Shown piece by piece: positions 1 through 55,633 of a DNA stretch of 64,000 nt (position 1 is the first letter of the stretch; each line of letters starts with the position of its first letter). Origin of the DNA: Selaginella moellendorffii (taxonomy: Eukaryota > Plantae > Lycopodiophyta). The position numbers were made by a program, and so were the translations under genes. Where the stretch lies: contig NW_003314356.1 in NCBI RefSeq assembly GCF_000143415.4, positions 310,001 through 374,000 on the forward strand. The letters run 5' to 3'. The notes under the pieces are model-generated. The model had not been told where the DNA came from. It did no database searches and saw nothing but the letters and a program-made list of their open reading frames with translations.

Positions 1-445
1 TACCTTCGGTGCACCTTCGGGTCCCAACATATGCCACTTGCTCAACTTTGCAAATTGATATTTTTAATTGAACTTTGCATAAGTACATAGAGTTCTGCCT
101 TGCAGAAATTCCTCCACTAGATCTCACACGTTCGCTAGGTTCTCCTCCGGTTCCCATGTTGCTTCGCAGTGTGGAAATCCTTTCCACTTCACATGGAACT
201 CTCTCACCTCGCGTCTTTGTCGCTTGCTCTTGCGCGCATTGAGGATGGCCTCGACTTCGTATTCCTCTTCCCCTTGGATAACCTCAGGTAAAGGTCTTAC
301 TTGGTCCTTGCAAAGCGGATCCTCAAAGTACGGCTTGAGTAAGTTCACGTGGAACACTGGGTGCATCTTCCCCATCTCTCGAGGAAGTCGGAGTCGGTAA
401 GCCACTTTACCGATTCGTGCCTCAATCTTGTAAGGCCCCGCGAAC

Positions 446-497
446 CTGCTTAAGGAACTCAAGATCAATTCATTTATAGGAATACATGCATTTTTAC
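446..497 (-). other. Spliceosomal intron 2 of integrase (copy 1), 52 nt
   Basis: GTAAAA...TTAAGCAG; removal restores KLTQ-R-FAGPY. Confidence 0.85.
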
Positions 498-915
498 CTT
501 TGGGTCAACTTTCGGCTGATCCCACTTGGTAGCCTAAGGTTCTTGGTGTTCAGCCACACCTTCTCCCCAGCTTGGAACTCTACATCTCGGCGCTTTAGGT
601 TTGCATACTTGGTTTGCCTTTGTTGAGCCCGTTCCAAGGAATCCCTCACTAGATTCCAAATGTTGAATCTTTCCGCCGTGAATGCCTCCACTGCGGGTAG
701 CTCTCCATGATACTCAGCCATGCCGAGTTCCACAGGACCTTCAATAGCTCGCCCATTGATGACTTCCCATGGACTCACCCCGATACTCGAATGTGGTGAG
801 TTGTTATAACACATTTCCGCAAGTCCCAAATGACTTACCCAATCGGTCTGGTCTCCCTAGACATAGCATTGCAAATAATCCTCCAGCTGCCTATTCACCC
901 TTTCCGTTTGTCCGT

Positions 916-962
916 CTGTCAAGAAGTGTTAGTGTCACCAAACTTGACTTAATACCCCATAC
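916..962 (-). other. Spliceosomal intron 1 of integrase (copy 1), 47 nt
   Basis: GTATGG...CACTAAC...TTGACAG; removal restores [12 protein letters not shown]. Confidence 0.85.
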
Positions 963-1000
963 CTGTCTGTGGGTGATAGGCTGTACTGAATTTCAACTTG

Positions 1001-3176
1001 AAGCTCTATTTCGTTAAAGTGGGAATTGTCATTATCCCACTTGTAAAATAAGGTTTCCAAACCTTTATATAGTATATAAATATAACAAAATTTAACTGCA
1101 TTGAGGCACATACCATTTTATTTTAAACAAGGAAATGTCTACTCAATCACTTCTCCTCCCCCTGCCACTGCTTCACCTCTCTCTTCTCCTTGTCATCGTC
1201 GTCCAATTTCTTTCCATCCTTTTAATATTGGCTCAGTTGCTCCGAGTCTAGGTGGAGCCCAAGTCCCCATTCAATCTTTACTTTCCCCTTATTAATAAAA
1301 CAACTTCGTAGACTTCCAATAACATGCTGTAACACTTCTAGTATAATGCAAATCCTCTCAAAGAATTGTCTTTTAATATTAATACAATGGCATGGAACCC
1401 CATGCCATAATAAGTTACATTTTTAAATAAATACATGCCATCTCAGACTGTTAAGTTACATTTTTAAATAAATACATGCCATCTCAGACTGTTATTTTTT
1501 TCCTCCAACGCTTATACAATAATCTTGGAATTTCATCACTCTCCACACTATCAGGATTTAAACCCAATAGTAATGCCATCTCTTCTCTAATACGTCCACG
1601 CTCATGTTCAGTGGTCAAAGAACCCATCCGGTTGAGCAGATTATGGAGATGCGGATAGTGCTTGGCTAGACAATATACATGCCATAAATGATGACTGGTG
1701 TCTGTCCGATCAAATGGCTTCTGATATACCGTTCCATCTGCCATTTGGTTGATTTCTGCAGCCACCTCCTGGACTGGCCGGTTCTCTATCACCATCGCTC
1801 CAAGCCATTTTGCAAGGTCCCCCAGAACATACGGTTTCTTCTCCCTAGTTTCCATATTGCAAGAGATGGGGTGCACTGCATATGTGTGCGTGTTCGCTGC
1901 AGTTTTAATCGGCGAGTCATCGATGATGAGGATTTCACTTGACCTAGCAGTCCGGTTCATCACTACAGCCTCTGGCTTGACGAAGATGGGCTTGCTACCC
2001 CTCACATGGACCATAGTCAAGCAATCCTCCTGTGTTAGGAGAAAGTCAAATGGTAATATTACTCGCGTCTGATCGTGCATCATCTGTAGCAACGTTAATG
2101 CATTGTGGCGCATCATGGATGTCCAAACTCCCAATTGCAAATTGAACCCGGCCCTCTGTTTTAAGTGTTGCATGGTCATTATTAGATCCCGCAGTTTCTC
2201 CCGTGTGATTAATGTGAATCTATCTCTTTTGACCAACTTGCGACTGCAGGCTTTGGAGGGTGCAGTGACATTCGAGGACGAGCCACGCTCATGGGAGAAA
2301 AGGACACCGTTCAGATCAAAAACGATACAGTACCTTCGCCGTGACTCTGAAATGAAATGCGTCAGCATAAAAAATGGTACAAGTCAATTTTACCATCTAC
2401 AATATTAGCAAATGGTGCTCCCGATGGTCGTTGAGAGGGTTTTGGTCGAGGAAACGTGAAGGGCGGAAATACTCTCCTCTGCAATGTGGGGTCAATCGCA
2501 TCCGATGGCGTGTGGGCACATGCCATTTCAGCTGTAGACTTTGGTACAACTGGCTCAACAGTGGCATGGGGTGGTTCCGATGGCGTGTGATCACACGCCA
2601 TTTCAGCTGGTGCCTCCGTTGGCAAAGTGGACATGACCGAACAGGCAGCAGGGGCGGTGTAGGGAGGTTTCAACGGCGCGTAGTCAGACGATTGGGCACA
2701 CGTTGAGTCCGTTGGAAATGAGGATACGACTGGCTTGGCGGCTGGGGCGGCCTCATGCGGGTCCAATGGCGCCTGGTCACCGTCAGTTGGATATGTGGAC
2801 AAGATTGACTCAGTGGTATGGGGAGCATCAAGTGGAGCGTGGTCAGCTTGCTTGGCGTTGATATGGATAGTAGCCTCCACCAGCTCTGATGACTCTTGCA
2901 GGCAAGTAGAGTCCACTGGCGGACCCATATGCATGTCCAAATATCTCCCTTCGATTGAGATGGTATCCTCCCTACTGGCTACTAAAAACAAACTCATTAG
3001 CACATTGAATCGACTATACTGTATTTACCATCAACTGCTATTGAGGAACTAGGACCGATATCACTTGGGCGCACTGCTGATTCTGAAGGATTGGACATAC
3101 GTTTCGACCCTTGCTTGGCACTATCCTTCCTCGACACTAAAGGCTAGAGTTTGTATCGTAATTCAACTGAATAATC
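1001..3176. mobile_element. Truncated copy of the Sola-like TIR transposon (left end only)
   Basis: Begins with AAGCTCTATTTCGTTAAAGTGGGA, the exact reverse complement of 60056-60079. Colinear and near-identical with 48806-50931; truncated at about 3176. Confidence 0.92.
1484..3136 (-). CDS. 3' exons (3136-3029, 2981-2394, 2346-1484) of the transposon accessory gene: low-complexity linker plus FCP1/SCP-like HAD domain
   Basis: 47-nt GT-AG introns at 2982-3028 and 2347-2393 join the ORFs in phase 1. HAD motif I IVFDLNGVL, VWTS and IIDDSPIK present. Frame is open in this copy. Confidence 0.8.
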
Positions 3177-3479
3177 CTAGGGATTTTGTGTCTCACAACT
3201 CCACCACCCATAGACGAAGTTCGATGTCCTCATTGAACGGTAAACCCTCCTATAAAGTAACACCCAAATGTATTACTAGTTCCATCCTTGGCACCCAGCC
3301 AATATTTGTCTATGGTATGACACCAAAGACGCACCATGCCTCGTCCATCCTCTAAGGAGCATAGTCTCTCCAATATAGAGGCTCATTTGACCACCTGGGG
3401 TGGTTTGCTCCCTTTTATTGGTTCAGTTTTTGCTAAACCCGTTAGAGACTCCCTCTCTAACTCAATTCCACTACTCATT

Positions 3480-5547
3480 TGTAAGGAACCAACTCGCCGA
3501 GGTGTCGTAGGCTAAAGGAACCCCGAAAGCAATACCAAAATGACAAAGAGTTCATCGGATGAGACCAAGTCGAAGATCGAGTCCAAGACCGACTCTAGGA
3601 CCGAGTTCGAGATCGAGTCCGGAATCGATGCAACGTGTATGTACATTTCTCCAAGTCCTTTAGGGATCAAAACAACATTGAGAGCGCACTCTCAAAGAAA
3701 CTAGTGAAACTATGAGCGCGAACGCCCGGCGCTGCTCTTGGGCTGTCCACCTCCCAGGTGACTCCACCGCGGAGCTTGAAGCCACCTGCTTCGCCTCGCC
3801 ACTCCTCCACTCGGTCACAATGATGTCAAGCCGGATGAACACCATGTCGATCTAGCTCAACGTCGTCGCAGCCAAGCAGTCCAACTCGAGCACGATGACC
3901 CGGCGTCGCTCATGGGTCACTCGCCTCCAAGGTGATTCCACTGCACAAGCTGAAGCCACCTGTTACGCCCCAAGACGTGATGCTGTGTCTTGGAGCGCCT
4001 ACCTCCCCAGTGTACTTCCAGCACTAAGTCGGTGCCCATTGCGAACAAACTCCAAGGCGTAGAACAAGCAAGGTGTGAGCCTCCTCCAGCTCTAGACTAG
4101 AGCGTGCTACCTTGCCTCCCACACTAGACAAGTGCGCTGGCCCCCTTCAATGATATACGAGCCCCCGTTGCCGGCATCGCGACAATCACAAGACTTGCAA
4201 GCCTCCGCAAACCTCCTCAAAGGACTAGCCCTGAAGCAAGAACCATGTGGGATCCCCTCCGCGAGCAAACCAACTCGGCCATCCGCCACTGGCCCCCTTT
4301 GTGACAGCACTTCCCTGTCACTAGATCCAAAAATGCGCCCATAGTGTCTTCCACGTCCATCCACCGCGGACACTTTGCTATGTCGGGATGTCGTCCCGAA
4401 CTGTCCTCCACCAGTCAACAAAGTTCCCATGACTTGGTCGTGTTTCCACGACTCAAGTCACCAAGAACCTCCGACACATGCAGCTTCACGCTCCCCGTAC
4501 CTCAGTCACCACCTTGCATGGCCCGACCTAAACGAGTCCGGAATCGAGTCCGAGACCGACTCGGGGACCGAGTTCGAGTCCGAGTTCGAGACCGAGTTCG
4601 AGACGGAGTCCGAGATCCGAAATCGGGTCCGAGACCGAGTCCGAGGTCGAGTCCGAAGTCGGGTCCGAGATCGGGTCCGAGATCGAGTCCGAGATCGAGT
4701 CCGAAACCGAATCCGAAGTCGGATCCGAAATCGGGTCCGAGATCGAGCCAGAGACTAAGTCCAAATACTAATACGGGTCAAGGGGTGAAAGCCCAAAGTG
4801 TACGTCTCCCAGGGGGGGGGGGGCTGCAGGGGGTTCCAAAAGTATAGTAGGGATAGTGAGGTCCAGGAACCAGTTTTGAAGGGACTCTCCAGTTGGGCTT
4901 CCAAACCGACTTGAGGTTGAGACTGGGACCGAGGGGCCTTGGGTGGGAGTGAGCATGGACTTGGCTGGTGCCGGAGGGGCCATCCAAGGAAGTGCTCAAG
5001 AGCAGCTCCCACTCCCGAAAGGGAAACCGATTGCGGTGCTCCCAGCTCATGTGGAGTGGTGCCCCACTTGAGTACCATGCGGCTCATTGGTCCTCGCCCT
5101 CCCTAGGGGCTTGGGCCTTCCTTCGGGATGGAAGTGGGGGACGAGAGGTACCCATACCGGGCCGCTAGGCCACGGTGTTTCGCCCCGGCATCCCGAAGCA
5201 AGTGTTGCACTCAAGACTTGGGATTTAGAGGGTCCCATGATCAAGTCTTGTGGTATCAAGGGATGTTAGGAACCTGGAAGCTTGGTGTGCTTGGCTGCTT
5301 GTGCTTGCGGGGAGTGTAGCCAAACCTTAAGTCCAGTCTAACCCGGGGAGGGGGATTGGGAGTGATTTGGGAATCCGAGGAAGGATGGCTAACACTCCGT
5401 TGCTCGTGCATTGAGTAACTGAAACCAAGTAAGAGCTGGTACCATAGGCGAGAACCTTGGCCAGGGAACTTAGCAAAAGCCAAGGCAGTGTTGGACGGAT
5501 AGACGAGGTAAGCTGGCAAATTGGAAAGGAAAAATTTGTGGCTTACA
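3480..5547 (+). repeat. 5' LTR of family A (contains a 904-bp insertion at 3629-4532)
   Basis: TGTAAGGAACC...GTGGCTTACA, matching 12585-13746 once the insertion is removed. Confidence 0.95.
3629..4532 (-). mobile_element. Unclassified retroposed insertion (non-LTR-like, variably truncated), copy 1
   Basis: Absent from the 3' LTR. Flanked by a 15-bp direct repeat CGAGTCCGGAATCGA (3614-3628 and 4533-4547). Same left end (TGCAACGTGTATG) as 18678. Strand is inferred. Confidence 0.75.
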
Positions 5548-5550
5548 ATT

Positions 5551-5562
5551 TGGTATCGGAGC
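5551..5562 (+). promoter_or_regulatory. Primer-binding site (tRNA-iMet type)
   Basis: TGGTATCGGAGC, 3 nt after the LTR end; one mismatch to TGGTATCAGAGC. Confidence 0.9.
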
Positions 5563-5606
5563 CTTTATCTCAGTTCTAGCGAAGGATAGAGGCGGATTGC
5601 TGGGAG

Positions 5607-8600
5607 ATGGCAAGGGCAGGGCGTAAGCGAACCCAGGCGAAGACGGAACCTCCGCCGGAGCTGGAGCCTCCGGTCGAACAAGAGGCTATGGATGAGGAAT
5701 CCTTGCATGAGGAGGACTCTAGTGAGGAAACTTCAAAACAGGAGTCCGGTGGCGAGGTTCGGTCGTCCAAGGCTCGATTGGACGTGCTAGAAGGACAATT
5801 GGCACAGACCAATGCCCTGCTGGAAACTCTCGTACGCAAGCTAAAGCGTGACGAGAGGCGGAAGAAAAAGAAAAAGACTGCGGATGTTGGCAGCGCAGAA
5901 GGTGCGGATCTTTCGGCCGGGACTGAGGCAAAACCAGACAAGGTCGAACAGACCGAAGTAGAATCAGTCCCTCAGGCAGTTCCCAAGTACAAACCGAAGC
6001 CCCCACCGGTCTTCAAGGGAGTGAACGACTATAAGGTGGTGGAGGATTGGTTTTACGATATGGAGGACTACTTCCGAGCGTTGCGGTTACCGAGCTCGGA
6101 GAAGGTCCCATGTGCAAAACCATACTTGGCAGATAATGCCAAGTCTTGGTGGAGAACGACGGAGGCCAACGAAGGACCAGTGGCCACTTGGGACATGATG
6201 AAGGCGAGGATCCGCGCAACATACGTTCCTCCGAATGCCACTCTGCATCTGAGAGATGAGCTGAGTAGGCTGAAGCAGACTGGAACCATCCAGGAATATG
6301 TGAATGGGTTCATGGCAAAGAGGATACTTGTCACGGACATGGGGGATATGGATGCGTTCCATGCCTTCATATCCGGTTTGCAAACCTGGGCTCGCGGTGA
6401 GGTGATGCGGTGGAACCCGACCAACTACAAGGAAGCGTTGGATGCGGCCATCAAGGTGCATTTCAACGATAACCTGCGAAAGGGGAACACGACGGGGTCG
6501 GGATCCACATTTAGCAAAGGGGCCAAACCAAGGGGAACGTATAGCAAGGGGAAATTCAAAAAGAGTTTCTCTAAGAATGAGTCCTTGGGGTTCCGGAAAA
6601 GCAAATCTGGTGGCCAGCGAGCGAGTACGTGGGGGAGTCAAGCGAAAAAAGACAAACCCACGGATAAGAAGGTCAAGTCGTATAGCAGCGTGGGAAACAA
6701 CGTATGCTACAACTGCGGTGAAGCGGGACACTTCTCGAAGGAATGTCCCTACCCGAAGAAGGCCAGAGCCAATATGGCCATCAAGTCGGGTGAAGTCCAA
6801 ACTGAGGTATGTGATCCAGTCCCTAACTCAAAGTTATTCATTACACGAGCAACTTTGGTAGAGAGTCGTTCGCGACATCTACTAGCCCTCCGAGGGAAGC
6901 TCGGAGGTAGCTTTGTTAAGATCCTTATTGACACGGGTGCTTCGGATAATTTTGTGGCTGCAGACATAGTCCAGCAAGCCGGACTAACGGTGCAGCGGCT
7001 AGGCGAACCAAGGACTATAGAGTTTGTTCAAGGTAGCCAAAGCACCGATGAGATACTTCGACAAGCGAGAGTCAAAGTGGGGACATGGAAAGTGGACATG
7101 GATTTCACTGTCTTGGACATGGCGGGATTTGACGTGATCTTCGGAATGGATTGGTTTAATCGGTTCGTGGTAGCCCTGCATGGACAAGGTAGGAACCTTG
7201 TGGTATTGGCGAATGCCCAAGGAAGAAGATCTAGGGTGGAGGCCCAGGATCTAAAGGTAGGGCAAAGCAAGGCCAAAGAGTCATGCTTAAACCTGGTGTC
7301 CACGAGAGGACAACTCACTAAAGGAACTAAGGCAGCCTTTTTGTGCTTACTCTCGGTGAAGAGTGACAAAAAGACAACGGAAGAAGTACCTTTAGTGATC
7401 CAGCAGGTGCTGGACCAATTCCAAGATACGATGCCGGAGGAGCTACCGGCGGGGTTGCCCCCCGCACGACCGATAGAACATAAGATTGAGCTGGTCGAGG
7501 GTGCTGAGGCGGTGGTTCGTCCACCCTATCGATTGAACGAAAAAGAACTCAAGGAGCTCAAGAGCCAACTAGAGGAGTTGGTGGACAAAGGGTATGTTAG
7601 GTTGAGCAAGTCGCCGTATGGGGCGCCGGTGCTATTTGTGAAAAAGAAAGATGGATCTATGCGCATGTGCATAGACTACCGGTTGCTCAACAAGTATACC
7701 AAGAAGAACAAGTACCCTTTGCCAAGGATCGAGGACCTGTTCGATAGGTTGGGAAAGGCAAAATACTTCTCGAGGATTGACCTAAGGTCAGGATACTACC
7801 AGATCAGGGTAGCTGAGGAAGATGTCGAGAAGACAACCTGTCGAACGAGGTATGGGAGCTTTGATTTTCTGCTGATGCCCTTTGGGCTGTGCAATGCGCC
7901 GGCAACGTTTTCGGCGTTGATGAACCACATCTTTGTACCCTGTCTGGATCGCTTCGTGGTCGTCTATATTGACGACATCCTGATCTATAGCGAGACGCTA
8001 GAGGAGCATGCCGAACACTTGGCGAAGGTGTTTGAGAAACTAAGGGAACACAAACTGTATGCTAAAGAGAGCAAATGTGACTTTGCTCAACAAGAGGTAA
8101 AGTTTCTCGGGCATGTGGTGGGCCAGGACGGGCTCAAGGTGGACCCGGAGAAGGTCCAAGCGATCCAGGAATGGGAACGACCATCGAATGTACATGAGTT
8201 GAGGGCGTTCCTGGGGCTATGCAACTACTATCGAAATTTTATCAGACACTATTCGAGAGTAGCTCTGCCCTTAACGGACCAAACAGGAAAAGGGAAGATG
8301 GTATGGACAGCGGAATGCGAGGCGGCATTCGTCCACCTCAAGGGGAAGTTGAGGAAGGCTCCGGTGTTGGCATTACCAGACTTTGGTAAGGACTTTGAGG
8401 TAGACACGGATGCTTCGGACTTTGCGTTGGGCGCAGTTTTGAAGCAAGACAACCATCCAGTAGCGTTCTTCTCGAAGAAGCTGGACAAGGCTCAACGGAA
8501 GTGGCCTGCCCACGAGAAGGAATTGTTTGCGGTGGTCAAGGCGCTCAAGGAGTGGCGACACTACCTTAAGAGACACTTCAAGGTTTACACGGACAATGTG

Positions 8601-10376
8601 GCAACGAAACACTTCTTGTCACAGCCCGACCTAAGGGGAAAACAAGGTCGGTGGGCCAATGCTTTGGCTGAGTTTGATTGCGAGATCCTGTACAAGCCTG
8701 GGAAGAGCAACGTCGTGGCAGATGCGCTAAGTCGAAAAGCGAGCTTGAAGTTGGCGATATCTAGCGCGACAGCAACCTTTTGGGATGATGTGCGGACTGC
8801 ATACAAGAGTGATGGTCTAGCACAAGAAGTGTTGCTGAGGAATCTGGAGGCACGGGAAGCTCACCAGAGAGGTGAGCTGCCAACGGAAGAGAAAACGGGC
8901 TATGCGGAACACAACGGACTCATATATTACAAGCAAACGAGGGTGTATGTTCCAGAAGGGGAACTAAGGAAGGTAGCCTTGGAAGAGTGTCATGACGGAC
9001 CTCTCACGGGACACGGCGGAGTGCCCAAGACGATGGGCTTACTCAAAAGGAAGTATCACTGGCCAGATATGGCTAAGGACGTCCAAGACTATGTAAAGAC
9101 ATGTCCAACATGTCAGCAGGTCAAAGCCGTGACGAAGGCTAGTGGGGGCTTGTTGCAAAGCATCCCCATTCCAGATCGTCCGTGGAAATGTCTCACGATG
9201 GACTTCATCACGGGACTACCCCCAAGCGAGGGGTTCGATGCGATATTCATGGTGGTGGACCGATTTTCAAAGATGGCACATTTCATACCCACCACAACGG
9301 ATGTGGATGCGGAAGGTGTGGCGAAGCTGTTCTTCGAACAAGTGGTTCGAGTGCGGGGAAGGCCGGAAGAGATTATCTCAGATCGAGATAAGATCTTCAC
9401 CAGTAGGTTCTGGAGGACACTCCTAGAACAGTATCGCACCAAGTTGAAATTCAGCACGGCCTATCACCCACAGACAGGTAATGGGTATTGAGTCAAGATT
9501 GATGGCACTAACACTTCTTGACAGACGGACAAACGGAAAGGGTGAATAGGCAGCTGGAGGATTATTTGCGATGCTATGTCTCGGGAGACCAGACCGACTG
9601 GGTAAGTCATTTGGGACTTGCGGAAATGTGTTATAACAACTCACCACATTCAAGCATCGGGGTGAGTCCATGGGAAGTCATCAATGGGCGAGCTATTGAA
9701 GGTCCTGTGGAACTCGGCGTGGCCGAGTATCATGGAGAGTTACCCGCAGTGGAGGCATTCACGGCGGAAAGACTCAACATTTGGAATCTAGTGAGGGATT
9801 CCTTGGAACGGGCTCAACAAAGGCAAACTAAGTACGCGAACCAAAAGCGTCGGGATGTGGAGTTCCAAGCTGGGGAGAAGGTGTGGCTGAACACCAAGAA
9901 CCTCAGGCTACCAAGTGGGATCAGCCGGAAGTTGACCCAAAGGTAAAAATGCATGTATTCCTGTAAATGAATTGATCTTGAGTTCCTTAAGCAGGTTCGC
10001 GGGGCCTTACGAGATTGAGGCTTGAATCGGTAAAGTGGCTTACCGTCTCTGACTTCCTCGAGAGATGGGGAAGATGCATCCCGTGTTCCACGTGAACTTA
10101 CTCAAGCCGTATTTTGAGGATCCGCTTCGCAAGGACCAAGTAAGACCTTTACCTGAGGTTATCCAAGGGGAGGAGGAATACGAAGTCGAGGCCGTCCTCA
10201 ATGCGCGCAAGAGCAAGCGACAAGGACGCGAGGTGAGAGAGTTCCATGTGAAGTGGAAAGGATTTCCACACTGCGAAGCAACATGGGAACCGGAGGAGAA
10301 CCTAACGAACGCGCGAGATCTAGTGGAGGAATTTCTGCATGGCAGAACTCTATGTACTTATGCAAAGTTTAATTAA
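5607..10376 (+). CDS. Gag-Pol polyprotein (Gag, CCHC, protease, RT, RNase H, integrase, chromodomain); exons 5607-9477, 9525-9942, 9995-10376; last exon has two CGA>TGA stops
   Basis: [14 protein letters not shown]; LIDTGAS; YIDD; DTDASD; HHCC; MDF...SDRD...TERVN; GPY; [10 protein letters not shown]. Stops at 10023-10025 and 10050-10052 are Arg codons in copy 1. Confidence 0.93.
9478..9524 (+). other. Spliceosomal intron 1 in integrase core, 47 nt
   Basis: AG|GTAATG...CACTAAC...CTTCTTGACAG|AC; removal gives [13 protein letters not shown]. Confidence 0.88.
9943..9994 (+). other. Spliceosomal intron 2 before the integrase GPY/F motif, 52 nt
   Basis: AAG|GTAAAA...TTCCTTAAGCAG|G; removal gives RKLTQRFAGPY. 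Confidence 0.88.
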
Positions 10377-10725
10377 AAGTATCAATTTGAGAAGTTGAGC
10401 AATGGCATATGTTGGGACCCGAAGGCGCGCCGAAGGTAAGCTAATTAGCATGGGTTAGCTAGGTCGACCAGGCGTAGGGAGCTACGTCCGACTCCCTGCG
10501 GGGATGTCGAATCCGTAGACGTATTCTACGGAGGTTGGGTTCGAGTCCCAACCCCCTAGTAAAGCAAGGCTGGGTTCAAGTCCCGACCCTATACTAGGGC
10601 GTGGTGAGGTGAGGAGTATAGGGACACCTATATTCCGTTGTCATGGGCTCTTGGCCGGGGAGGTTAACTTAGGCACACCGCTAAGTGGGGGGATGCCCCC
10701 AGAGACATGGTCAACAAGTCGTAGG

Positions 10726-12526
10726 TGTAAGCGACTAAATTTTCCATTCTACTTTAGTCACTTAACCACACCTCTGACCACTTGGAGGAGTCTCATTCAC
10801 AACCTCCATAAGTCCAATCCAGGACTTGGGACTTGCTAGCCCCGAGAATGGCATCCATGCCACTCAACATTTGCACTTGGTCCAAGTGCTCCATGTGTCC
10901 AATCCCATGACCGACACTCAAAGGTACCACCGACATAGCAGCCCGTTACGCTAAGGCCATGCCCAATCACCTTTGCTACACTAGTAATCCAATACCACTT
11001 GCATCACCGTCTTGGCTCTCCAAGACTAGGCAAACCATCCGTGAGTGGTCACCTCAGATCCACTCCTTAGCATCCTTAGGATGCCCACCGACAAGGGGAA
11101 TAGCCTTCCCCAATATCCCTCTGTCAGTCCCCACTAAGTCCCTTTCTGCCCTTGGCCGTGTTTGCCAACACTGCCACTGGATCAAGACCCACAGGCCCGA
11201 CCACTAAGTCCCACGGTCCTCTAGGACTTCCTCACCACACGACTGTGTCCTTGGTCACTACCCCAGAGGACGGCTCCTCTTCCTTTCCACAATCTGGGCC
11301 TTTGGGACAACATTTCGGAACACCGTGGCCTTACGCGAGCCACCTGGGTACTCTCCTCGCCTTCTGCCCTTGGGTGCTCTAGCCATGGGCTTAGAGCGGG
11401 TTCCGTTGAGCCACACCAGGTATCCAAGTAGGTAGTGCCACCCACACTTGGACTGGGAGCATCGGCCAGTCGATCTCCCGGGGGAACTAGAGCCGGCTCT
11501 TGAACACTTCACCAAGCTACCCTGCTTGTCGGTCTGTGTTCACTCTAGTCTTGGACTTCCCAGTGGGCAGCTCATCACCCAACACTGGGTCCGGCCTTCC
11601 TGGGCCAAACTGGCCTTTCCTGGCCAAACTGGCTCCACTGCAGTCCTCCCCCTACTATACTTTTGGAGCTCACCAAACCCCCCAGGGTCTGGGAGACGAA
11701 CGCTTTGGGCTTTCACCCTCTCAGGCTCCGGACTCGGACTCGGAGTCGGACTCGAACTCGGACTCGGACTCGGACTTGGACTCGGATTCGGACTCGGACT
11801 CGGGCTCGGGCTCGGTCTCGGCCTCGGCCTCGGTCTCGGTCTCGGTCCCGATCTCGGTCTCGGTCTCGATCTCGGTCCCGGTCTCGGTCTCGACTTCGGA
11901 CTCTATCTCGGACTCCATCTCGGACTCCATCTCGGGTCCATCTTGGGTCCATCTCGGACTGCATCTCGGACTCCATCTCGGGTCCATCTCGGACTCCATC
12001 TCGGACTCCATTTCGGGTCCATCTCGGGTCCACCTCGGACTCCATCTCGGACTCCATCTCGGGTCCATCTCGGACTCCATCTCGGACTCCATTTTGGGTC
12101 CATCTCGGGTCCACCTCGGACTCCATCTCGGACTCCATTTCGGGTCCATCTTGGGTCCACCTTGGACTCCATCTCGGACTCCATCTCGGGTCCATCTCGG
12201 GTCCACCTCGGACTCCATTTCGGACTCCACTTCGGACTCCAACTCGGGTCCATCTCGGACTCCACTTCGGACTCCAACTCGAGTCCATCTCGGACACTCC
12301 CACGTGTCATGTGTTGGTCCTTTTGGGTCCCTTTTTGGAGCCTCGCCTTTTGCTTGCTTCGTGCTCGTTCCTCGAGCACTTCGTTGGGAGTTCCACTCCC
12401 GCTCTTGACTTTTCAAGTCGGAGCTTTTGGTCCAAACGTGTTACGCTCGTTTGGCTCTCGCTTCGGCCACTACCATGTGGCGCCCTTCCGGCTCCACTTT
12501 GGGGCCTAGGGATTTTGTGTCTCACA
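10726..12526 (-). mobile_element. Solo LTR of family B nested in the 3' UTR of family A
   Basis: TG...CA ends, TSD GTAGG (10721-10725 and 12527-12531), homologous to 17093-19356. Confidence 0.92.
11727..12296. repeat. CpG-rich LTR minisatellite (6/12-nt units such as GGACTC and CTCGGACTCCAT)
   Basis: Visible tandem units that create open low-complexity ORFs in all frames. Related arrays at 4533-4750, 12670-12950, 18088-18480 and 21735-22090. Confidence 0.9.
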
Positions 12527-12572
12527 GTAGGATAAAACGAGACGTTCGATGTGGGCATTGAACTTCTTCTAT

Positions 12573-12583
12573 GGGTGGTGGAG
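12573..12583 (+). promoter_or_regulatory. Polypurine-tract-like plus-strand primer site of family A
   Basis: GGGTGGTGGAG just before the 3' LTR; identical tract precedes the family B LTR at about 3198-3208 (minus). Confidence 0.75.
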
Positions 12584-12584
12584 T

Positions 12585-13746
12585 TGTAAGGAACCAACTC
12601 GCCGAGGTGTCGTAGGCTAAAGGAACCCCGAAAGCATGACCAAAATTACAAAGAGTTCATCGGATGAGACCAAGTCGAAGATCGAGTCCAAGACCGACTC
12701 TAGGACCGAGTTCGAGATCGAGTCCGGAATCGAGTCCGAGACCGACTCGGGGACCGAGTTCGAGTCCGAGTTCGAGACGGAGTCCGAGATCCGAAATCGG
12801 GTCCGAGACCGAGTCCGAGGTCGAGTCCGAAGTCGGGTCCGAGATCGGGTCCGAGATCGGGTCCGAGATCGGGTCCGAGATCGAGTCCGAGATCGAGTCC
12901 AAAACCGAATCCGAAGTCGGATCTGAAATCGGGTCCGAGATCGAGCCAGAGACTAAGTCCAAATACTAATACGGGTCAAGGGGTGAAAGCCCAAAGCGTG
13001 CGTCTCCCAGGGGGGGGGGGGGCTGCAGGGGGTTCCAAAAGTATAGTAGGGATAGTGAGGTCCAGGAACCAGTTTTGAAGGGACTCTCCAGTTGGGCTTC
13101 CAAACCGACTTGAGGTTGAGACTGGGACCGAGGGGCCTTGGGTGGGAGTGAGCATGGACTTGGCTGGTGCCGGAGGGGCCATCCAAGGAAGTGCTCAAGA
13201 GCAGCTCCCACTCCCGAAAGGGAAACCGATTGCGGTGCTCCCGGCTCATGTGGAGTGGTGCCCCACTTGAGTACCATGCGGCTCATTGGTCCTCGCCCTC
13301 CCTAGGGGCTTGGGCCTTCCTTCGGGATGGAAGTGGGGGGTGAGAGGTACCCATACCGGGCCGCTAGGCCACGGTGTTTCGCCCCGGCATCCCGAAGCAA
13401 GTGTTGCACTCAAGACTTGGGATTTAGAGGGTCCCATGATCAAGTCTTGTGGTACCAAGGGATGTTAGGAACCTGGAAGCTTGGTGTGCTTGGCTGCTTG
13501 TGCTTGCGGGGAGTGTAGCCGAACCTTAAGTCCAGTCTAACCCGGGGAGGGGGATTGGGAGTGATTTGGGAATCCATGGAAGGATGGCTAACACTCCGTT
13601 GCTCGTGCAGTGAGTAACTAAAACCAAGTAGGAGCTGGTACCATAGGCGAGAACCTTGGCAAGGGAACTTAGCAAAAGCCAAGGCAGTGTTGGACGGATA
13701 GACGAGGTAAGCTGGCAAATTGGAAAGGAAAAATTTGTGGCTTACA
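12585..13746 (+). repeat. 3' LTR of family A (1162 bp)
   Basis: TGTAAGGAACC...GGCTTACA followed by TSD TCATT. Confidence 0.95.
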
Positions 13747-16700
13747 TCATTGTCGAGTAGTCTCAGATTCCATTGACATAACCTTGCACTTTGGAACTTT
13801 TAGTTTTGACTTCTCAGAGTCAATTTCCTAGGTGTCTTCGACACCTTATGTTGCACATGGTGCAACTCCACTTCTCTATCCTAGGAAGTTTTTTACTTGA
13901 GGATACCATCATCCTCTCTCCGATATCGTGCCACCTTTGACACTAAGTTTCAGTTATCATAATTGGTGCTAAGGCTGCCCACAGCCCTATTATTTGGCTA
14001 CGTTACCACTCCCCCCTTTGGAGCATCCACTTGACCAAGCCACACCATTATCAATAGTTCAAATCAACACTTTGAACTAGGAATCATATTCCTTAACCCA
14101 AACAAAGACCTTGTCCTTGTTTAGCCACAAGATCACCTGGTGATCTCATCTTGACCCCTTAATAGGTCTACCCATAGGAACCAGGTCTTCTAGACCCCTC
14201 CATGTTGTTGACTATGACCCCGGGGGCATCCCCCACACTTGGCAGTGCGCCCAAGCCAACCCTTCCGACCAAGGATCCATAGCAACTGAGACTGGGTGTC
14301 CCCATCTCATTCACCATGTCCTTGGTGCCCTTTGCACCAAAATGTTCAAGTTAGATATGCCGAGCTTTCACTCTAAGCAATCTAACGGTGCATCACGACT
14401 CCGAGGCATCCCTCGCTTGGCGGTGTGCCCAAACCAGTCTCCTCACTGAGAGTCCATGACCACCGAAAAATGAGTGTCCTCATATTCCAAACCATCACCA
14501 CGCCCTAGTGATTTGGGACTCGAACCCAAGCACTAGAGGGTCGGGACTTGAACCCAACCTCCGTATATGCATATACAAATGGCATCACACTAGATGCCTA
14601 GCGTGATTCCCCACGCCGGTGCACCAATTTATATTTAAAGCACGTTATAGATCACAGCATAGGAACCTAGTTCCTCTACACTGCCAAGTTCTCTCGCTTG
14701 ACAAGTCTGTGATCATGCATGGACTCCTCCATGCTCGGCCCCATGGCCCACCCTTTTTTAAGTTATCACCTTCAACTAGGGCATTTATTCCCCTGACTTG
14801 CCAATCTCGCTTGGCAAGTCCTCCGACCATTGTAACATGGTTCCTGCATAAGCGTGAAAGTTCTTGGCCATCGACTTTCATTCAAAGCCCTCTCTTTGAA
14901 CACTCGGGAACTACTTCCCTAACCTTGATAGCTTTGCCTCATTGCAAGCTTCAAGCCCACGCTTTTACTGCGCCACTCTGATTTTACGCATTTCATGAAC
15001 CATTTACACTTAGCCTTTCTAGGTACTAAGCTACTTAAAATCGTCTTTGGGAACCTTGAAGGAACTCTGTCCCTTAGCTTGCTAAGGCCTCCCTTTTTGC
15101 AAGCTTTATAGTTGCTATATAGTCTAACATGGACAATTCTATATTTTAGACTCTCCATGGCATCACGGTCGCTAGCAACAACATCCTCGAGCACCCTCTT
15201 GATTCTCCACTCCCAACTTGCATAACCACCGTTGGATATGCCTTTCGATTTCTATGGTTCAGTTCCATCCCAATACTATGTGCCTTTTGGCCGCATATGT
15301 TTCCTTTGGTTATTCTCCTCCAGACTAGGAGGATAGCTTTGCACATTTTACTATGCCTTAGCAAGTATTCTTAAAGATGAACCTACCCGATAGCCTAGGG
15401 AGTGGTTCCTCAATCTTGGGCATGCTCACCTTATAATCCCACACATTGGGATTAACATTGCTGCTTATGGGCCCTTACATGCACATCACTAGCCTTGCCA
15501 AAATTCCATTTTTGGCTTTGTCCAATTTGGGTAGACAGTCTTCTATTGTCTCCACAACCTTGGACATTTGGATAGCACCTACTATCCATCATTCGCTAGG
15601 GATTTAATCCCTTGGGCCTTATCTATTGGCCTTGCGACACGAAACACCACCTTCTGGTGTTCTAGAGTGTTTGGGTGTCCCAATGATGGCCTTCTGACAA
15701 TGAGCATTCCCGTTTACGACATTGACTTACTATATCGCAATATAAGCAATTTATCCCCCATAAGGGTATATCTAACTTCCTTATGCCATTAAGAAGCCTT
15801 GGGTAGCTACCTTCTACCCATTTGCTTGCACCTCTTGCTTAGTTGCCCCATAGTTGTCAAGTCCTACAACTCATTGCTTGGTGCTTCCACACCTCCATCA
15901 TTATCTGGGTCACCACACTCCAACCGCATGCCTTCCAGCTTAGGCCATGCCATTCCCGCTTCTGTTGGGATTCCCTTGGCAAAGGGTTCTTATGAACCCA
16001 CCATCATAACCTCTAGGTATCACACCTTGGCACATTTGATGTCTCCACACCATCGGCCCCACGAGCCTACCCTTATGACACTACTTATTAGTGTCTAGGT
16101 CTTTGCCAAGACTAATATGAGTTGTTCCTCATGCTAACTATCCGTTAGCACCGCACCATAGTGTTTGCACCCAGCTCTGGGCCAAAGTTGCTTTCTTTTG
16201 GGAACATCTTTCCCACAACTTTAGTATGGCACATTCTGCCATCAATGAGATACCTACTGTTCTCATACTTGGATCTTATGATCCCCCCCATACCTCATGG
16301 GGCACCATACACCTCAGTCCAAATGCTCCAACCAATCCCTTAGAACCATTCCCTGACTCCGCTTAAGTCATCCAGCATTTTGGACTTTGCTAATCCAACA
16401 ACCTGCGAGGTCTCAGTCTTAGAGGTGCCAACTTACTGGAATACAACTTCTTGTATTCATGTCCTACTCACAAGGACAATCTTTGCAAGTGTTACTCTAA
16501 CACTTGATGATTTTCTTGGGGCTAACCTTTGCCCCTTAGGACTACTTGTCCATGTGATGAGAATAGCAACTCGTCTTTAAGTACACCCCCAACTCCTTGG
16601 GTTGTTCCAGCATTTATTAGAGGTAGTCCGGCTACCATTTCAAGGACTGGTGTCCTCTTCTGTATTTGACCTCCCACGGTCAACAATTCCAGTCTCAAAT

Positions 16701-17092
16701 TTATGAGTACCAGCCTCAACCATATAAGGGTAATCTTGTGACTCCTTTATTGTTTTGGAGTCTTCATCTTTCCCGTGATCCCAACTATAGTTGTTTACCA
16801 CAACTACATTAGCTCGTTTACTATGTCAAACGCTCATCTGGATCACATCCTCAGCTCTCTGAGGAAACCCTTATATTGTTCCCAAGATCCCAAAGTCATT
16901 CCCTTACTGGCCCTCTTCCATCCACCACATTGTGCACAAGTTCACACATGAACTTGAGCGGAGAGCCATGTCCTTTCGACGTGCTACTCCTCGAGGATAG
17001 GTCCATATCTAGGACCTTCCAACTCCAATACAAGTGGTGATATGCTTGGCCACCAATAAGAGTCGGACTAAGGAACAGCTCCAATACCAAGT

Positions 17093-19356
17093 TGTAAGCG
17101 ACTAAATTTTCCATTCTACTTTAGTCACTTAACCACACCTCCAACCACTTGGAGGAGTCTCACTCACAACCTCCATAAGTCCTATTTTAAACTTGGGCTT
17201 GCCAGTCCCAAGAATGGCATCCCTGCCACTCAACCTTTGCACTTGATCCTAGTGCTCCACGTGTCCGATCCCAGTACCGACACCCCAAGGTACCACCGAC
17301 ATATCAGCCCGTTACGCTAAGGCCATGCCCCTTTACTTTGGTCACACCAGTGGTCTACCACCTACATCACAGTCCCATCTCTCAAGGACTGAGCCATCCG
17401 TCCATGAGTGATCATTCCAGATCCACTCCTTAGCATCCTTAGGATGCCCACAGACATGGGGAATTGCCTTCCCCAATATCCCTTTTTTTAGTTTTCACCA
17501 AGTCCCTTTTTGCCTATAGCCGTGTTTGCCAACACTGCCACTGGATCAAGGCCCACAGGCCCGACCACTAAGTCCCACGGTCCTCTGGGACTTCCTCACC
17601 ACTCGGCTGTATCCTTGGTCACTACACCAGAGGACTACTCCTCTTCCTTTCCACAGTCTGGGCCTTAGGGACAACAATTCGGAACGCCATGGCCCTATGC
17701 GGGCCTCATGGGTACTCTCCCCACCTTCCACCTTTGGGTGCTCTAGCCATGGGCTTAGAGCGAAGTTCCGTTGAGCCACGACAGGTATCCAAGTAGGTAG
17801 TGCCACCCACACTTGGACTGGGAGCATCGGCCAGTCGATCTCCCGGGGGAACTAGAGCCGGCTCTTGAACACTTCACCAAGCTACCCCGCTTGTCGGTCC
17901 GTGTTCACTCTAGTCTTGGACTTCCCAGTGGTCAGCTCATCACCCAACACTGGGTGCAACCTCTCTGGGCCAAACTAGCCTTTCCTGGCCAAACTGGCTC
18001 CACTGCAGTCCTCCCCCTACTATACTTTTGGAGCTCACCAAACTCCCCAAGGTCTGGGAGACAAACGCTTTGGGCTTTCACCCTCTCAGACTCGAACTCG
18101 GACTCGGACTCAGCCTCGGTCCCGATCTCGGTCTCGGTCTCGGTCTCGGTCTCGGGTCCTTCTCGGACTCCATCTCGGATTCCATCTCGGGTCCATCTCG
18201 GACTCCATCTCAGACTCCGTCTCGGTCCATCTCGGACTCCATCTCGGACTCCGTCTCGGTCCAGCTCGGACTCCATCTCGGACTCCATCTCGGACTCCGT
18301 CTCGGTCCACCTCGAACTCCATCTCGAACTCCATCTCGGACTCCGTCTCGGTCCACCTTGGACTCCATCTCGGACTCCATCTCGGACTCCATCTCGGGCT
18401 CCACTTCGGACTCCATCTCAGGTCCATCTCGAGCTCTACTTTGGGTCCATCTCAGACTCCACTTCGGGTCCACCTCGGACACTTCCATGTGTCATATGTT
18501 GGTCCTTTTGGGTCCCTTTTTGGAGCCTCGCTTATTGCTCGCTTCATGCTCGTTCCTTGAACACTCCGTTGGGAGTTCCACTCCCGCTCTCAACCTCTCA
18601 AGTCGGAGCCTTTTAGTCCAAACGTGTTACGCTCGTTTGGCTTTTGCTTCAGCCACTACCACGTGGCACCCTTTCGGTGCAACGTGTATGTACATTTCTC
18701 CAAGTCCCTTAGGGATCAAAACAACATTGAGAGCGCACTCTCGAAGAAACTAGTGAAACTATGAGCGCGAATGCCCGGCGCTGCTCTTGGGCCGTCCACC
18801 TCCCAAGTGACTCCACTGCGGAGCTTGAAGCCACCTGCTTCGCCTCGCCACTCCTCCACTCGGTCACAATGATGTCAAGCCGGACGAACACCATGTCGAT
18901 CTAGCTCGACGTCGTCGCAGCCAAGCAGTCCAACTCGAGCACGATGACCCGGCATCGCTCATGGGTCACTCGCCTCCAAGGTGATTCCACTGCACAAGCT
19001 GAAACCACCTGTTACGCCCCAAGACGTGATGCTGTGTCTTGGAGCGCCTACCTCCCCAGTGTACTTCCAGCACTAAGTCGGTGCCCATTGCGAACAAACT
19101 CCAAGGCGTAGAACAAGCAAGGTGTGAGCCTCCTCCAGCTCTAGACTAGAGCGTGCTACCTTGCCTCCCACACTAGACAAGTGCGCTGGCCCCCTTCAAT
19201 GATATACGAGCCCCCGTTGCCGGCATCGCGACAATCACAAGACTTGCAAGCCTCCGCGAACCTCCTCAAAGGACTAGCCCTGAAGCAAGAACCATGTGGG
19301 ATCCACGTGGCACCCTTTCGGCTCCACTTTGGGGCCTAGGGATTTTGTGTCTCACA
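17093..19356 (-). repeat. 5' LTR of family B element (contains insertion 18678-19302)
   Basis: Same termini as the solo LTR 10726-12526; adjacent PBS-like sequence. Confidence 0.88.
18678..19302 (-). mobile_element. Unclassified retroposed insertion, copy 2 (shorter)
   Basis: Near-identical to 3629-4253; flanked by the direct repeat CCACGTGGCACCCTTTCGG (18659-18677 and 19303-19321). Confidence 0.75.
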
Positions 19357-46030: not shown

Positions 46031-46344
46031 TAAGGGAAAGGGCATATAAACAAGAATGCATATCCTTTTTCAATTGGTTAAATTGGTTATTTGGTGTTAT
46101 ATATTCTTGGGTTTAAATAATATTAAGCTATGTGACCTCCCAAGAAGTCCAAATTCAAGAGATTACAATTGGATACTTTGCATAACTTATCAAAACCTTG
46201 CTCTAGCTATATAGCTGGGGCATCCTAGTGGTGCAAGGTGGAGGGAGTAGCCACAATGCTTGTGCTAGGCTGTAGTGCTCTGAAATGCCATTTTGAAGTT
46301 TTGGATCTTGGAGAAGAAGAAGAGTGGTGCTCTTGTTTTGTGAC

Positions 46345-55613: not shown

Positions 55614-55633
55614 CTAAACCCTAAACCCTAAAC
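55614..55633 (+). repeat. Short plant telomere-type tract (TAAACCC) x ~3 / telo-box
   Basis: CTAAACCCTAAACCCTAAAC in the intergenic region of the transposon. Confidence 0.6.

What the first reader, a model, noticed from the sequence alone, without database searches (positions are those of the whole stretch)
9478..9994. Ty3/gypsy integrase interrupted by two spliceosomal introns that survive retrotransposition
Seen: 47-nt and 52-nt GT-AG inserts, the same size as host introns; intron 1 has a CACTAAC branch point and a pyrimidine tract. Their removal restores [12 protein letters not shown] and KLTQRFAGPY. Both occur at identical positions in the independent copy (916-962, 446-497), and the full-length copy has two LTRs and a TSD, so it was integrated with the introns in place. 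Unspliced RNA stops at 9489-9491, before the catalytic Glu of the DDE triad. Established: reverse transcription of spliced RNA should erase introns; the LTR-element splicing cases I know (copia, Ogre) mainly adjust Gag:Pol output. Inference: only spliced mRNA makes active integrase while unspliced RNA is preferentially copied, giving a splicing switch on integration and a split between mRNA and genomic RNA.
Basis: partly seen in the sequence, partly recalled or inferred. Interest (0 to 1): 0.9.

Follow-up and report, generated by a model that had tools for sequence, protein, structure and literature searches.

The report
Retrotransposon integrase split by real introns
A jumping gene of the spikemoss Selaginella (the published SM1-Galahad family) carries two tiny host-style introns in its integrase gene and two more upstream; RNA-type data show them cut out exactly while DNA copies keep them, which is rare for an element that copies itself through RNA.

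Summary
Window 3480-13746 (+) is a chromovirus with two LTRs and a 5-bp target duplication (TCATT). Its first reading frame has the length published for SM1-Galahad (3885 bp). Two GT..AG inserts (9478-9524, 47 nt; 9943-9994, 52 nt) split the integrase. Ten intron-free homologues align straight across both.

One 2500-nt contig of an RNA-type assembly skips both inserts exactly, and one raw RNA-seq read shows the first joint. A deep DNA-like run shows no intron-less form. The exons behind the first intron's stop show purifying selection between the two copies (pN/pS 0.15, P = 0.003), so they were translated.

- A 66-nt leader intron (5508-5573) holds the LTR end and the primer-binding site. RNA that loses it cannot prime its own copying, a plausible reason why the introns persist.
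- A 157-nt coding intron (6807-6963) covers the protease active site. Its removal gives a Gag-only message.

Both copies are damaged: copy A has two in-frame stops in the third integrase exon (exon 3) and a 905-nt insert in its 5' LTR, and copy B is truncated. The "splicing switch" remains inference. This scan has reported the same family many times on other DNA. Closest precedent: Ogre. Verdict: a new variant of a known kind.

The parts
3475..3479 (+). Target-site duplication TCATT, 5' side
   Evidence: Sequence read; the same 5 nt follow the 3' LTR.
3480..5547 (+). 5' LTR (TGTAAGG...CTTACA), carrying a 905-nt foreign insertion at 3629-4533
   Evidence: Self-BLAST, repeats, sequence. With the insertion left out it differs from the 3' LTR at 18 of 1137 aligned sites.
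5508..5573 (+). Leader intron, 66 nt, GAG|GTAAGC...TCTCAG|TT. It contains the last 40 nt of the LTR and the whole primer-binding site.
   Evidence: The joint 5505>5572 (GT..AG, cut +2) is in a 1041-nt contig of RNA-type run X1, with 110 nt on the shorter side. Sequence.
5551..5563 (+). Primer-binding site TGGTATCGGAGCC (13 nt, tRNA-Met type), 3 nt after the LTR end
   Evidence: Sequence. It matches the 13-bp tRNA-Met PBS described for SM1-Galahad in PMC3350952. No tRNA gene lies in the window to test the match directly.
5607..9491 (+). ORF1 of the unspliced RNA, 1294 aa: Gag, zinc knuckle, protease, RT, RNase H, integrase zinc domain, and the integrase core up to HPQT. It stops inside intron 1.
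   Evidence: ORF list, translation, Pfam domains. The length, 3885 bp, equals the published SM1-Galahad ORF.
6807..6963 (+). 157-nt coding intron (exitron), in frame when retained (aa 401-453, holds the protease DTGA at aa 442). Its removal shifts the frame into a stop two codons after the joint, giving a Gag-only message of about 401 aa.
   Evidence: The joint 6804>6962 (GT..AG, cut +2) is in X1 (255 nt on the shorter side) and weakly in X3 (28 nt). Sequence; frame and stop position.
9478..9524 (+). Integrase intron 1, 47 nt, phase 1, GT..AG, CACTAAC branch-point motif, in-frame stop at 9489-9491. It lies between the second Asp and the Glu of the DDE triad.
   Evidence: Excised exactly in the X1 contig, and one raw RNA-seq read in X14 shows the joint. 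Homologues are colinear across it.
9525..9942 (+). Integrase exon 2 (begins ..D-GQTERVN, holds the catalytic Glu)
   Evidence: Translation, homologue alignment, purifying selection between copies A and B.
9943..9994 (+). Integrase intron 2, 52 nt, phase 2, GT..AG. It splits the C-terminal SH3-like domain of integrase.
   Evidence: Excised exactly in the same X1 contig. Retained in a DNA-like contig of depth 132 that is identical to this copy (record 19). Homologue alignment.
9995..10376 (+). Integrase exon 3: end of the SH3-like domain plus the chromodomain. In this copy it is broken by in-frame TGA stops at 10023-10025 and 10050-10052. The natural stop TAA is at 10374-10376.
   Evidence: Translation. 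Pfam Chromo 6e-16 and a weak SH3_Tf2-1 match. Copy B reads sense codons at both TGA places.
10440..12584 (+). Long 3' non-coding region: a chain of hairpins with two tRNA T-loop-like hairpins (about 10530-10600), a 1.77-kb segment repeated elsewhere in the window, 12-nt tandem repeats, and a polypurine tract GGGTGGTGGAG at 12573-12583
12585..13746 (+). 3' LTR
13747..13751 (+). Target-site duplication TCATT, 3' side
1..1000 (-). Copy B: a truncated second copy (equivalent to A 9440-10438), 95% identical, with intron 1 at 916-962 and intron 2 at 446-497. It carries its own in-frame stops.

Best explanation
This is a slightly decayed copy of SM1-Galahad, a high-copy chromovirus (Ty3/gypsy) of Selaginella moellendorffii. 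The family carries four U2-type GT-AG introns.

The two flagged introns are obligatory non-coding mini-introns in the integrase. Unspliced RNA encodes Gag-PR-RT-RNaseH plus an integrase that stops before the catalytic Glu. Only RNA spliced at both sites can encode the full integrase core, its SH3-like tail and the chromodomain.

A third intron is a 157-nt coding segment over the protease active site. Its removal yields a Gag-only mRNA.

A fourth intron lies in the leader and contains the U5 end of the LTR and the tRNA primer-binding site. RNA that has entered the splicing pathway therefore loses the site needed to start reverse transcription, and only wholly unspliced RNA can be copied. That is why the introns are inherited.

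Shown: the introns, their exact excision in RNA-type data, their retention in DNA copies, the position of the PBS inside the leader intron, and selection on the downstream exons.

Inferred: that leader and integrase splicing go together on the same molecules, that the truncated integrase is inactive, and that splice efficiency limits integration.
For: Identity of the element:
- ORF1 is 3885 bp / 1294 aa, as published for SM1-Galahad (the paper gives 1295 aa), with the chromodomain on a separate short ORF. The paper never mentions introns and found no intact copy.
- Domain order is Gag-PR-RT-RH-IN, then chromodomain.

Introns are real:
- GT..AG ends, and frames restored at both sites.
- Ten intron-free homologues are colinear across both.
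- One 2500-nt X1 contig joins 9472>9520 and 9940>9993 exactly. One raw RNA-seq read (X14) shows joint 1.

Introns are inherited:
- Copies A and B share them although they differ at 49 sites.
- Copy A has LTRs 1.6% apart and a TSD.
- DNA-like run X8 (1543 contigs laid, depth in the hundreds) shows no intron-less joint.

Downstream exons are functional:
- Of 35 A/B differences in exons 2-3, 20 are synonymous against 11.9 +/- 2.7 expected. P = 0.003, pN/pS 0.15.
- Intron 1 diverges at about the synonymous rate, 6 of 47.

Leader intron: the joint 5505>5572 is in X1, and the LTR end (5547) and PBS (5551-5563) lie inside it.

Gag-only splice: the joint 6804>6962 is in X1, and the stop falls two codons after the joint.
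Against: - The RNA evidence is thin. X1 is only guessed to be RNA, and each joint rests on one contig.
- The real RNA-seq run gave a single spliced read at very low depth.
- X3 holds a contig that retains intron 1 and one that retains the leader intron, so splicing is incomplete or DNA or pre-mRNA is present.
- No molecule links leader splicing to integrase splicing. RNA spliced in the integrase but not in the leader would be copyable and would give intron-less progeny.
- Contigs drop rare variants, so the lack of intron-less DNA copies is not proven.
- Both copies in the window are damaged.
- The selection test rests on two copies only.
Confidence: 0.72

Rival explanations
1. The introns are real but are passengers. 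SM1-Galahad copies are mobilised in trans by proteins of intron-free relatives (for example SM2-Galahad, published with one 4731-bp ORF) or of a few intron-free masters. On this reading the split integrase is a tolerated defect, not an expression strategy.
For: The published survey found no intact SM1-Galahad copy, while SM2-Galahad has an intact single ORF. Both copies here carry stops. The window holds several pol-less relatives that share the element's 3' region, so trans-mobilisation does occur in this genome.
Against: Exons 2-3 lie behind the intron-1 stop, yet they show a strong excess of synonymous change between two diverged copies (pN/pS 0.15, P = 0.003). That is not expected for untranslated sequence. 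Splice sites are intact in both copies, and both introns are excised exactly. ORF1 is intact over 1294 codons.
Confidence: 0.15
2. The spliced contigs come from one or a few copies embedded in host transcription units or domesticated as host genes. In that case splicing reflects host gene processing, not the life cycle of the element.
For: Each joint is seen in a single contig that differs from this copy by about 3.7%. RNA-seq reads over the LTR (5016-5372) run on into unrelated sequence on both sides, so at least one LTR fragment is transcribed as part of another transcript.
Against: All four joints are GT..AG and are placed so as to make sense for the element: frame restoration at two sites, a stop just after Gag, and PBS removal. 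The introns are shared by diverged copies and by high-depth DNA contigs, so they are a property of the family and not of one locus.
Confidence: 0.08
3. The inserts are not introns. The X1 contig would then be DNA of an intron-less genomic copy or an assembly artefact, and the inserts are short insertions fixed in a dead lineage.
For: X1 is labelled RNA only by a guess.
Against: X1 totals 26 Mb of contigs, the size of a transcriptome, and shows four separate GT..AG deletions. A true RNA-seq read shows joint 1. The deep DNA-like run shows none of the joints. Two independent insertions that are both GT..AG-bounded and both restore colinearity with ten homologues are very unlikely by chance.
Confidence: 0.03

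Closest known systems
SM1-Galahad (Selaginella moellendorffii chromovirus; Int J Plant Genomics 2012, PMC3350952)
   Same: It is the same element. ORF of 3885 bp, LTRs above 1 kb with TG..CA ends, a 13-bp tRNA-Met PBS, core integrase at the ORF end, and the chromodomain on a separate short downstream ORF.
   Different: The paper describes three ORFs, 'no chromodomain at the C-terminus' and no intact copy, and never mentions introns (0 occurrences). The intron reading explains those oddities. The published reconstruction is about 7.5 kb. This copy is about 10.3 kb because of a 905-nt LTR insertion and a longer 3' non-coding region.
Ogre elements of legumes (Ty3/gypsy, Tat lineage; Steinbauerova et al. 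2008, as cited in PMC12786077)
   Same: A non-coding intron with stops inside pol, kept in genomic copies, which must be spliced out to join the downstream pol domains. Only part of the RNA is spliced. (These details are from my own knowledge; the paper was not held. The review confirms 'functional introns'.)
   Different: Ogre has one larger intron between the protease and RT. Here two mini-introns affect only the integrase, RT is made from unspliced RNA, and there are also a PBS-containing leader intron and a Gag-only splice. The lineage differs too (a chromovirus close to Galadriel).
shGAG splicing of Ty1/copia elements (Drosophila copia, barley BARE1, Arabidopsis EVD; PMC5580714, PMC3735527)
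   Same: The 157-nt intron at 6807-6963 is centred on the protease. It is coding when retained, and its removal shifts the frame into a stop just after the joint, giving a Gag-only mRNA. This is the logic described for EVD and BARE1.
   Different: Those are Ty1/copia elements, and Oberlin et al. found no such conserved splicing in Arabidopsis Ty3/gypsy. Coupled premature polyadenylation was not tested here. Those elements have no intron that must be removed to complete a pol enzyme.
Retroviral division between spliced mRNAs and unspliced genomic RNA
   Same: Spliced RNAs lose a cis element needed for replication, so only unspliced RNA is propagated. In deltaretroviruses and foamy viruses the major splice donor lies upstream of the PBS, so spliced RNAs lack it (own knowledge).
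   Different: In retroviruses the unspliced RNA encodes a complete Gag-Pol. Here the unspliced RNA encodes a truncated integrase. No env or accessory gene is involved.
Penelope-like elements that retain introns (Arkhipova et al. 2003; noted in PMC4209133)
   Same: Retroelements whose genomic copies keep spliceosomal introns.
   Different: A different class: no LTR-type reverse transcription, no tRNA priming, no integrase.

Membership tests
Ty3/gypsy chromovirus, family SM1-Galahad | Two LTRs with TG..CA ends, flanked by a 5-bp target-site duplication | tested here: met
   LTRs at 3480-5547 and 12585-13746. TCATT on both sides.
Ty3/gypsy chromovirus, family SM1-Galahad | Domain order Gag, PR, RT, RNase H, IN, with a C-terminal chromodomain | tested here: met
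   Pfam: Retrotrans_gag, zf-CCHC, RVP_2, RVT_1, RT_RNaseH, Integrase_H2C2 and rve on ORF1. Chromo (6e-16) on exon 3.
Ty3/gypsy chromovirus, family SM1-Galahad | Published hallmarks: a 3885-bp ORF, a 13-bp tRNA-Met PBS, LTRs above 1 kb | tested here: met
   ORF 5607-9491 is 3885 bp. PBS at 5551-5563. The LTR is 1162 nt. Paper text. The published sequence itself was not available to align.
U2-type spliceosomal introns | GT..AG boundaries, with a branch-point-like motif and a pyrimidine run before the 3' site | tested here: met
   All four introns have GT..AG. Intron 1 has CACTAAC 12 nt before its AG.
U2-type spliceosomal introns | Exact excision in RNA | tested here: met
   The X1 contig skips both integrase introns, and one raw RNA-seq read (X14) shows joint 1. 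The leader and 157-nt joints are in X1. Support is thin: one contig per joint, and X1's RNA label is a guess.
U2-type spliceosomal introns | Present in genomic DNA | tested here: met
   Two window copies. DNA-like run X8 shows no intron-less joint, and a depth-132 contig spans intron 2.
U2-type spliceosomal introns | Dependence on the spliceosome (lariat, snRNP requirement) | not testable with these tools
   Needs experiments.
Ogre-like intron-bearing LTR retrotransposons | A non-coding, stop-containing intron inside pol whose removal joins downstream pol domains | tested here: met
   Stop at 9489-9491 inside intron 1. The frames rejoin after removal.
Ogre-like intron-bearing LTR retrotransposons | Both spliced and unspliced RNA present | tested here: inconclusive
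   X1 has the spliced form. An X3 contig (9339-9947) retains intron 1, but X3 may contain DNA or pre-mRNA.
Ogre-like intron-bearing LTR retrotransposons | Belongs to the Ogre/Tat lineage | tested here: not met
   The element has a chromodomain, and the literature places it next to the Galadriel clade. It works like Ogre but is not a member.
shGAG-type alternative splicing (copia / BARE1 / EVD) | An intron around the protease whose removal frameshifts into a stop just after Gag | tested here: met
   Intron 6807-6963 holds DTGA (aa 442). The stop falls two codons after the joint.
shGAG-type alternative splicing (copia / BARE1 / EVD) | The element is Ty1/copia, and splicing is coupled to premature polyadenylation | tested here: not met
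   The element is Ty3/gypsy. Polyadenylation was not examined.

The most novel reading that the evidence does not exclude
SM1-Galahad has evolved a retrovirus-like split between messenger and genomic RNA by using host mini-introns. The cap-proximal leader intron removes U5 and the PBS, so commitment to splicing and competence for reverse transcription exclude each other. Integrase can be completed only from spliced RNA, which is never copied. Retrotransposition would then need both RNA pools in one cell. Integration competence would be set by host splicing or intron-retention conditions such as tissue or stress, a host-tunable gate not described for any LTR retrotransposon.
Probability: 0.35. 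Interest if true: 0.8.

Novelty: new variant of a known kind. Interest (0 to 1): 0.66.

Why it matters
Introns are expected to be erased from elements that replicate through RNA; that loss was the original proof of retrotransposition. A 2025 review names only Ogre and EVD as plant LTR retrotransposons with functional introns.

This element is abundant: the paper reports hundreds of copies per genome. It combines three uses of splicing in one compact unit: a Gag-only message, completion of the integrase, and removal of the primer-binding site from spliced RNA. That makes it a natural system for asking how a retroelement keeps apart the RNA to be translated and the RNA to be copied, and how introns can be gained and kept in such an element.

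It also corrects the published description of SM1-Galahad as having three ORFs, no C-terminal chromodomain and no intact copy. In practice, ORF-based TE annotation will score such families as broken.

Tried and rejected
1. Census of intron-less copies through the protein database.
- The polyprotein search gave no Selaginella copy; the best hit was 51% identical.
- The exon 2 search gave nothing.
- So no count of intron-plus against intron-minus copies could be made. A blank here says nothing.

2. The spliced joint-1 sequence was searched in the window with up to 3 mismatches and gave 0 matches. The window holds only two integrase copies.

3. The related LTR/gag fragment at 44825-46085 is about 72% identical in DNA. 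It lacks the LTR end, PBS and pol, so it says nothing about intron positions in relatives.

4. No tRNA gene lies in the window to test PBS complementarity.

5. Rfam on 3400-13800 gave only one chance-level miRNA match, E = 0.08, far below its gathering score.

6. The Ogre splicing paper (PMC2596294) is not held, so the Ogre details are from memory.

7. Short direct repeats flank both integrase introns (GACAG and AGGT; 'both' columns). They could hint at insertion with a target duplication. They largely overlap the splice-site consensus, so I give them no weight.

8. Read-through or frameshifting across the introns as an alternative to splicing was rejected. The frame of exon 1 meets a stop after four codons, and the RNA joints are exact.

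9. The raw RNA-seq run X14 is too shallow over the integrase (depth under 1) to estimate splicing efficiency.
Full report
**What is there**

Window 3480-13746 (+) is one LTR retrotransposon.
- Its LTRs are at 3480-5547 and 12585-13746. They begin TGTAAGG and end CTTACA, and are flanked by the 5-bp duplication TCATT at 3475-3479 and 13747-13751.
- With a 905-nt foreign insertion in the 5' LTR (3629-4533) left out, the LTRs differ at 18 of 1137 aligned sites, p = 0.016.
- A 13-nt tRNA-Met-type primer-binding site lies at 5551-5563, and a polypurine tract at 12573-12583.
- ORF 5607-9491 (3885 bp, 1294 aa) carries Gag, zinc knuckle, aspartic protease, RT, RNase H, the integrase zinc domain and the integrase core. 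A chromodomain lies further downstream in another frame.

The ORF length, the PBS, the LTR size and the "separate short ORF with the chromodomain" are those published for SM1-Galahad of Selaginella moellendorffii. That paper reports hundreds of copies about 95% alike, found no intact copy, and does not contain the word intron. Earlier notes of this scan name the same genome and family. I treated them as leads and re-tested the claims here.

**The observation**

It is correct to the base.
- Intron 1 is 9478-9524: 47 nt, GT..AG, CACTAAC at 9506-9512, phase 1.
- Intron 2 is 9943-9994: 52 nt, GT..AG, phase 2.
- ORF1 runs into intron 1 and stops at 9489-9491 (..HPQTGNGY*). The next frame opens with GQTERVN. 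Removing the inserts gives [12 protein letters not shown] and KLTQ-R-FAGPY.
- I kept the pieces apart and aligned ten intron-free homologues to the DNA: Closterium, Pinus, rice, and single-ORF contigs from Logan and JGI. Each gives three pieces in frames 3/2/3. They end at 9476, span 9512-9943 and start at 9993, with contiguous homologue coordinates. The inserts therefore interrupt an otherwise colinear integrase, and relatives at 40-50% identity lack them.
- The published sister family SM2-Galahad has one 4731-bp ORF. The introns therefore look like a gain in the SM1 lineage.

**The second copy**

Window 1-1000 (minus strand) matches A 9440-10438 at 95%. It has both inserts at the stated places with GT and AG intact.

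**Are they introns?**

I laid four runs on 4800-10700.
- In X1 (contigs of a run guessed to be RNA, 26 Mb in all) a single 2500-nt contig covers 7725-9472, 9520-9940 and 9993-10323. Both inserts are removed exactly at GT..AG.
- X14 is a true RNA-seq run of raw reads with depth under 1 over the integrase. It gave one read with joint 1, 41 nt on the shorter side.
- X8 is a DNA-like run with 1543 contigs laid and depth in the hundreds. It shows neither joint, and a depth-132 contig identical to this copy spans intron 2.
- X3 holds a contig (9339-9947) that retains intron 1, so unspliced RNA, pre-mRNA or DNA is also present there.

**An independent, evolutionary test**

Copies A and B differ at 35 sites in exons 2-3. 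Twenty are synonymous against 11.9 +/- 2.7 expected when the same changes are placed at random on sites of the same base and CpG status (P = 0.003). pN/pS is 0.15, and codon positions are 11/4/20. These exons lie behind the stop in intron 1. Selection on their reading frames means they were translated in the active lineages, which requires splicing. Intron 1 itself differs at 6 of 47 sites, about the synonymous rate. The test rests on two copies only.

The same X1 run shows two more GT..AG joints.

(a) 5505>5572 is a 66-nt leader intron at 5508-5573 (GAG|GTAAGC ... TCTCAG|TT). It contains the last 40 nt of the LTR and the whole PBS. From established knowledge of LTR-element reverse transcription, RNA without a PBS cannot anneal the tRNA primer and is a dead end for replication.

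(b) 6804>6962 is a 157-nt intron at 6807-6963, also seen weakly in X3 (28 nt on one side). It is in frame and coding when retained (aa 401-453, including the protease DTGA at aa 442). When it is removed, the frame shifts into a stop two codons after the joint, just behind the zinc knuckle. That gives a Gag-only message, the logic described for BARE1 and EVD.

**How it most likely works**

Three RNA classes would be expected.
- Wholly unspliced RNA is the template for reverse transcription. It encodes Gag-PR-RT-RNase H with an integrase that lacks the catalytic Glu, the SH3-like tail and the chromodomain.
- RNA spliced at the 157-nt intron gives Gag alone.
- RNA spliced at both integrase introns, with the 157-nt intron retained, gives the complete polyprotein.

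The leader intron is cap-proximal and is transcribed 4 kb before the integrase introns. RNA that enters the splicing pathway would therefore usually lose the PBS first. That would explain why spliced forms are not copied back and why the introns persist.

Shown: the four introns, the exact joints, the PBS position, retention in DNA, and selection on the downstream exons. Inferred: coupling of leader and integrase splicing on the same molecules, inactivity of the truncated integrase (from DDE biology), and any regulatory "switch".

**State of these copies**

Copy A is not intact. It has in-frame TGA stops at 10023 and 10050 in exon 3, where copy B reads sense codons, and a 905-nt insertion in its 5' LTR. 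Copy B is cut off 38 nt upstream of intron 1 and has stops at the equivalents of A 9581 and 10314.

**Comparison with what is known**

- The closest functional precedent is Ogre, which has a non-coding intron in pol that must be spliced. It belongs to another lineage, with one larger intron between the protease and RT. A 2025 review lists only Ogre and EVD as plant LTR retrotransposons with functional introns.
- The Gag-only splice matches copia, BARE1 and EVD, which are Ty1/copia. Oberlin et al. saw no such conserved splicing in Arabidopsis Ty3/gypsy.
- Spliced RNAs that lack the PBS are known from some retroviruses (own knowledge).
- Full-text searches found no paper describing introns in a chromovirus integrase or in SM1-Galahad.
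- I class it as a new variant of a known kind.

**Limits**

- The RNA evidence is one contig per joint plus one read.
- The DNA census rests on contigs, which drop rare variants.
- The protein databases returned no Selaginella copies.
- The scan has reported this family on many other pieces of the same genome, including first-reader predictions of the PBS-excising leader intron. Here that joint is seen in RNA-type data.

Noticed in passing
window 3629-4533 and 18674-19304: A 905-nt insertion in the 5' LTR of copy A is flanked by a 14-nt direct repeat (GAGTCCGGAATCGA). Its first 631 nt (3625-4255) are 98% identical to 18674-19304, where that sequence directly follows a copy of the element's 3' internal region (17090-18677). 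It may be the LTR of a related non-autonomous family or a recombinant.
   Followed up: partly
window 10440-10720: Just after the chromodomain stop, the RNA folds into a chain of hairpins (MFE -124.8 kcal/mol, z = -4.2). Two of them have tRNA T-loop-like sequences (GGGTTCGAGTCCC and GGGTTCAAGTCCC). There is no Rfam match.
   Followed up: partly
window 10723-12491; also 17090-18677, 20948-22340, 41447-42786, 63363-63969: A 1.77-kb part of the element's 3' non-coding region recurs five times in the window at 73-86% identity without adjacent pol. This suggests non-autonomous relatives that share the 3' end.
   Followed up: no
window 4533-4790, 12640-12990 and (inverted) 11715-12300: 12-nt tandem repeats of the CTCGGACTCGGA type lie in both LTRs and, in the opposite orientation, in the internal 3' region. 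This gives long imperfect inverted repeats within one transcript.
   Followed up: no
window 5016-5372: RNA-seq reads (X14, 15-18 deep) and an X1 contig cover only this part of the LTR and run on into unrelated sequence on both sides. An LTR fragment elsewhere in the genome is therefore transcribed as part of another transcript.
   Followed up: no
window 1484-2368 (-): A 294-aa ORF with a NIF/FCP1-like phosphatase domain (Pfam E = 4e-6) lies between truncated copy B and copy A. It may be a fragment of the ParB / FCP1-like DNA transposon that other notes place at 48806-60079.
   Followed up: no
window 9473-9477/9520-9524 and 9941-9944/9993-9996: Each integrase intron is flanked by a short direct repeat (GACAG; AGGT). 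This would fit intron gain by insertion with a small duplication, but it overlaps the splice-site consensus and may be chance.
   Followed up: partly
window 44825-46085: A degenerate relative, about 72% identical to the SM1 LTR and gag. It lacks the 229 nt that hold the LTR end, the PBS, the leader intron and the start codon.
   Followed up: partly
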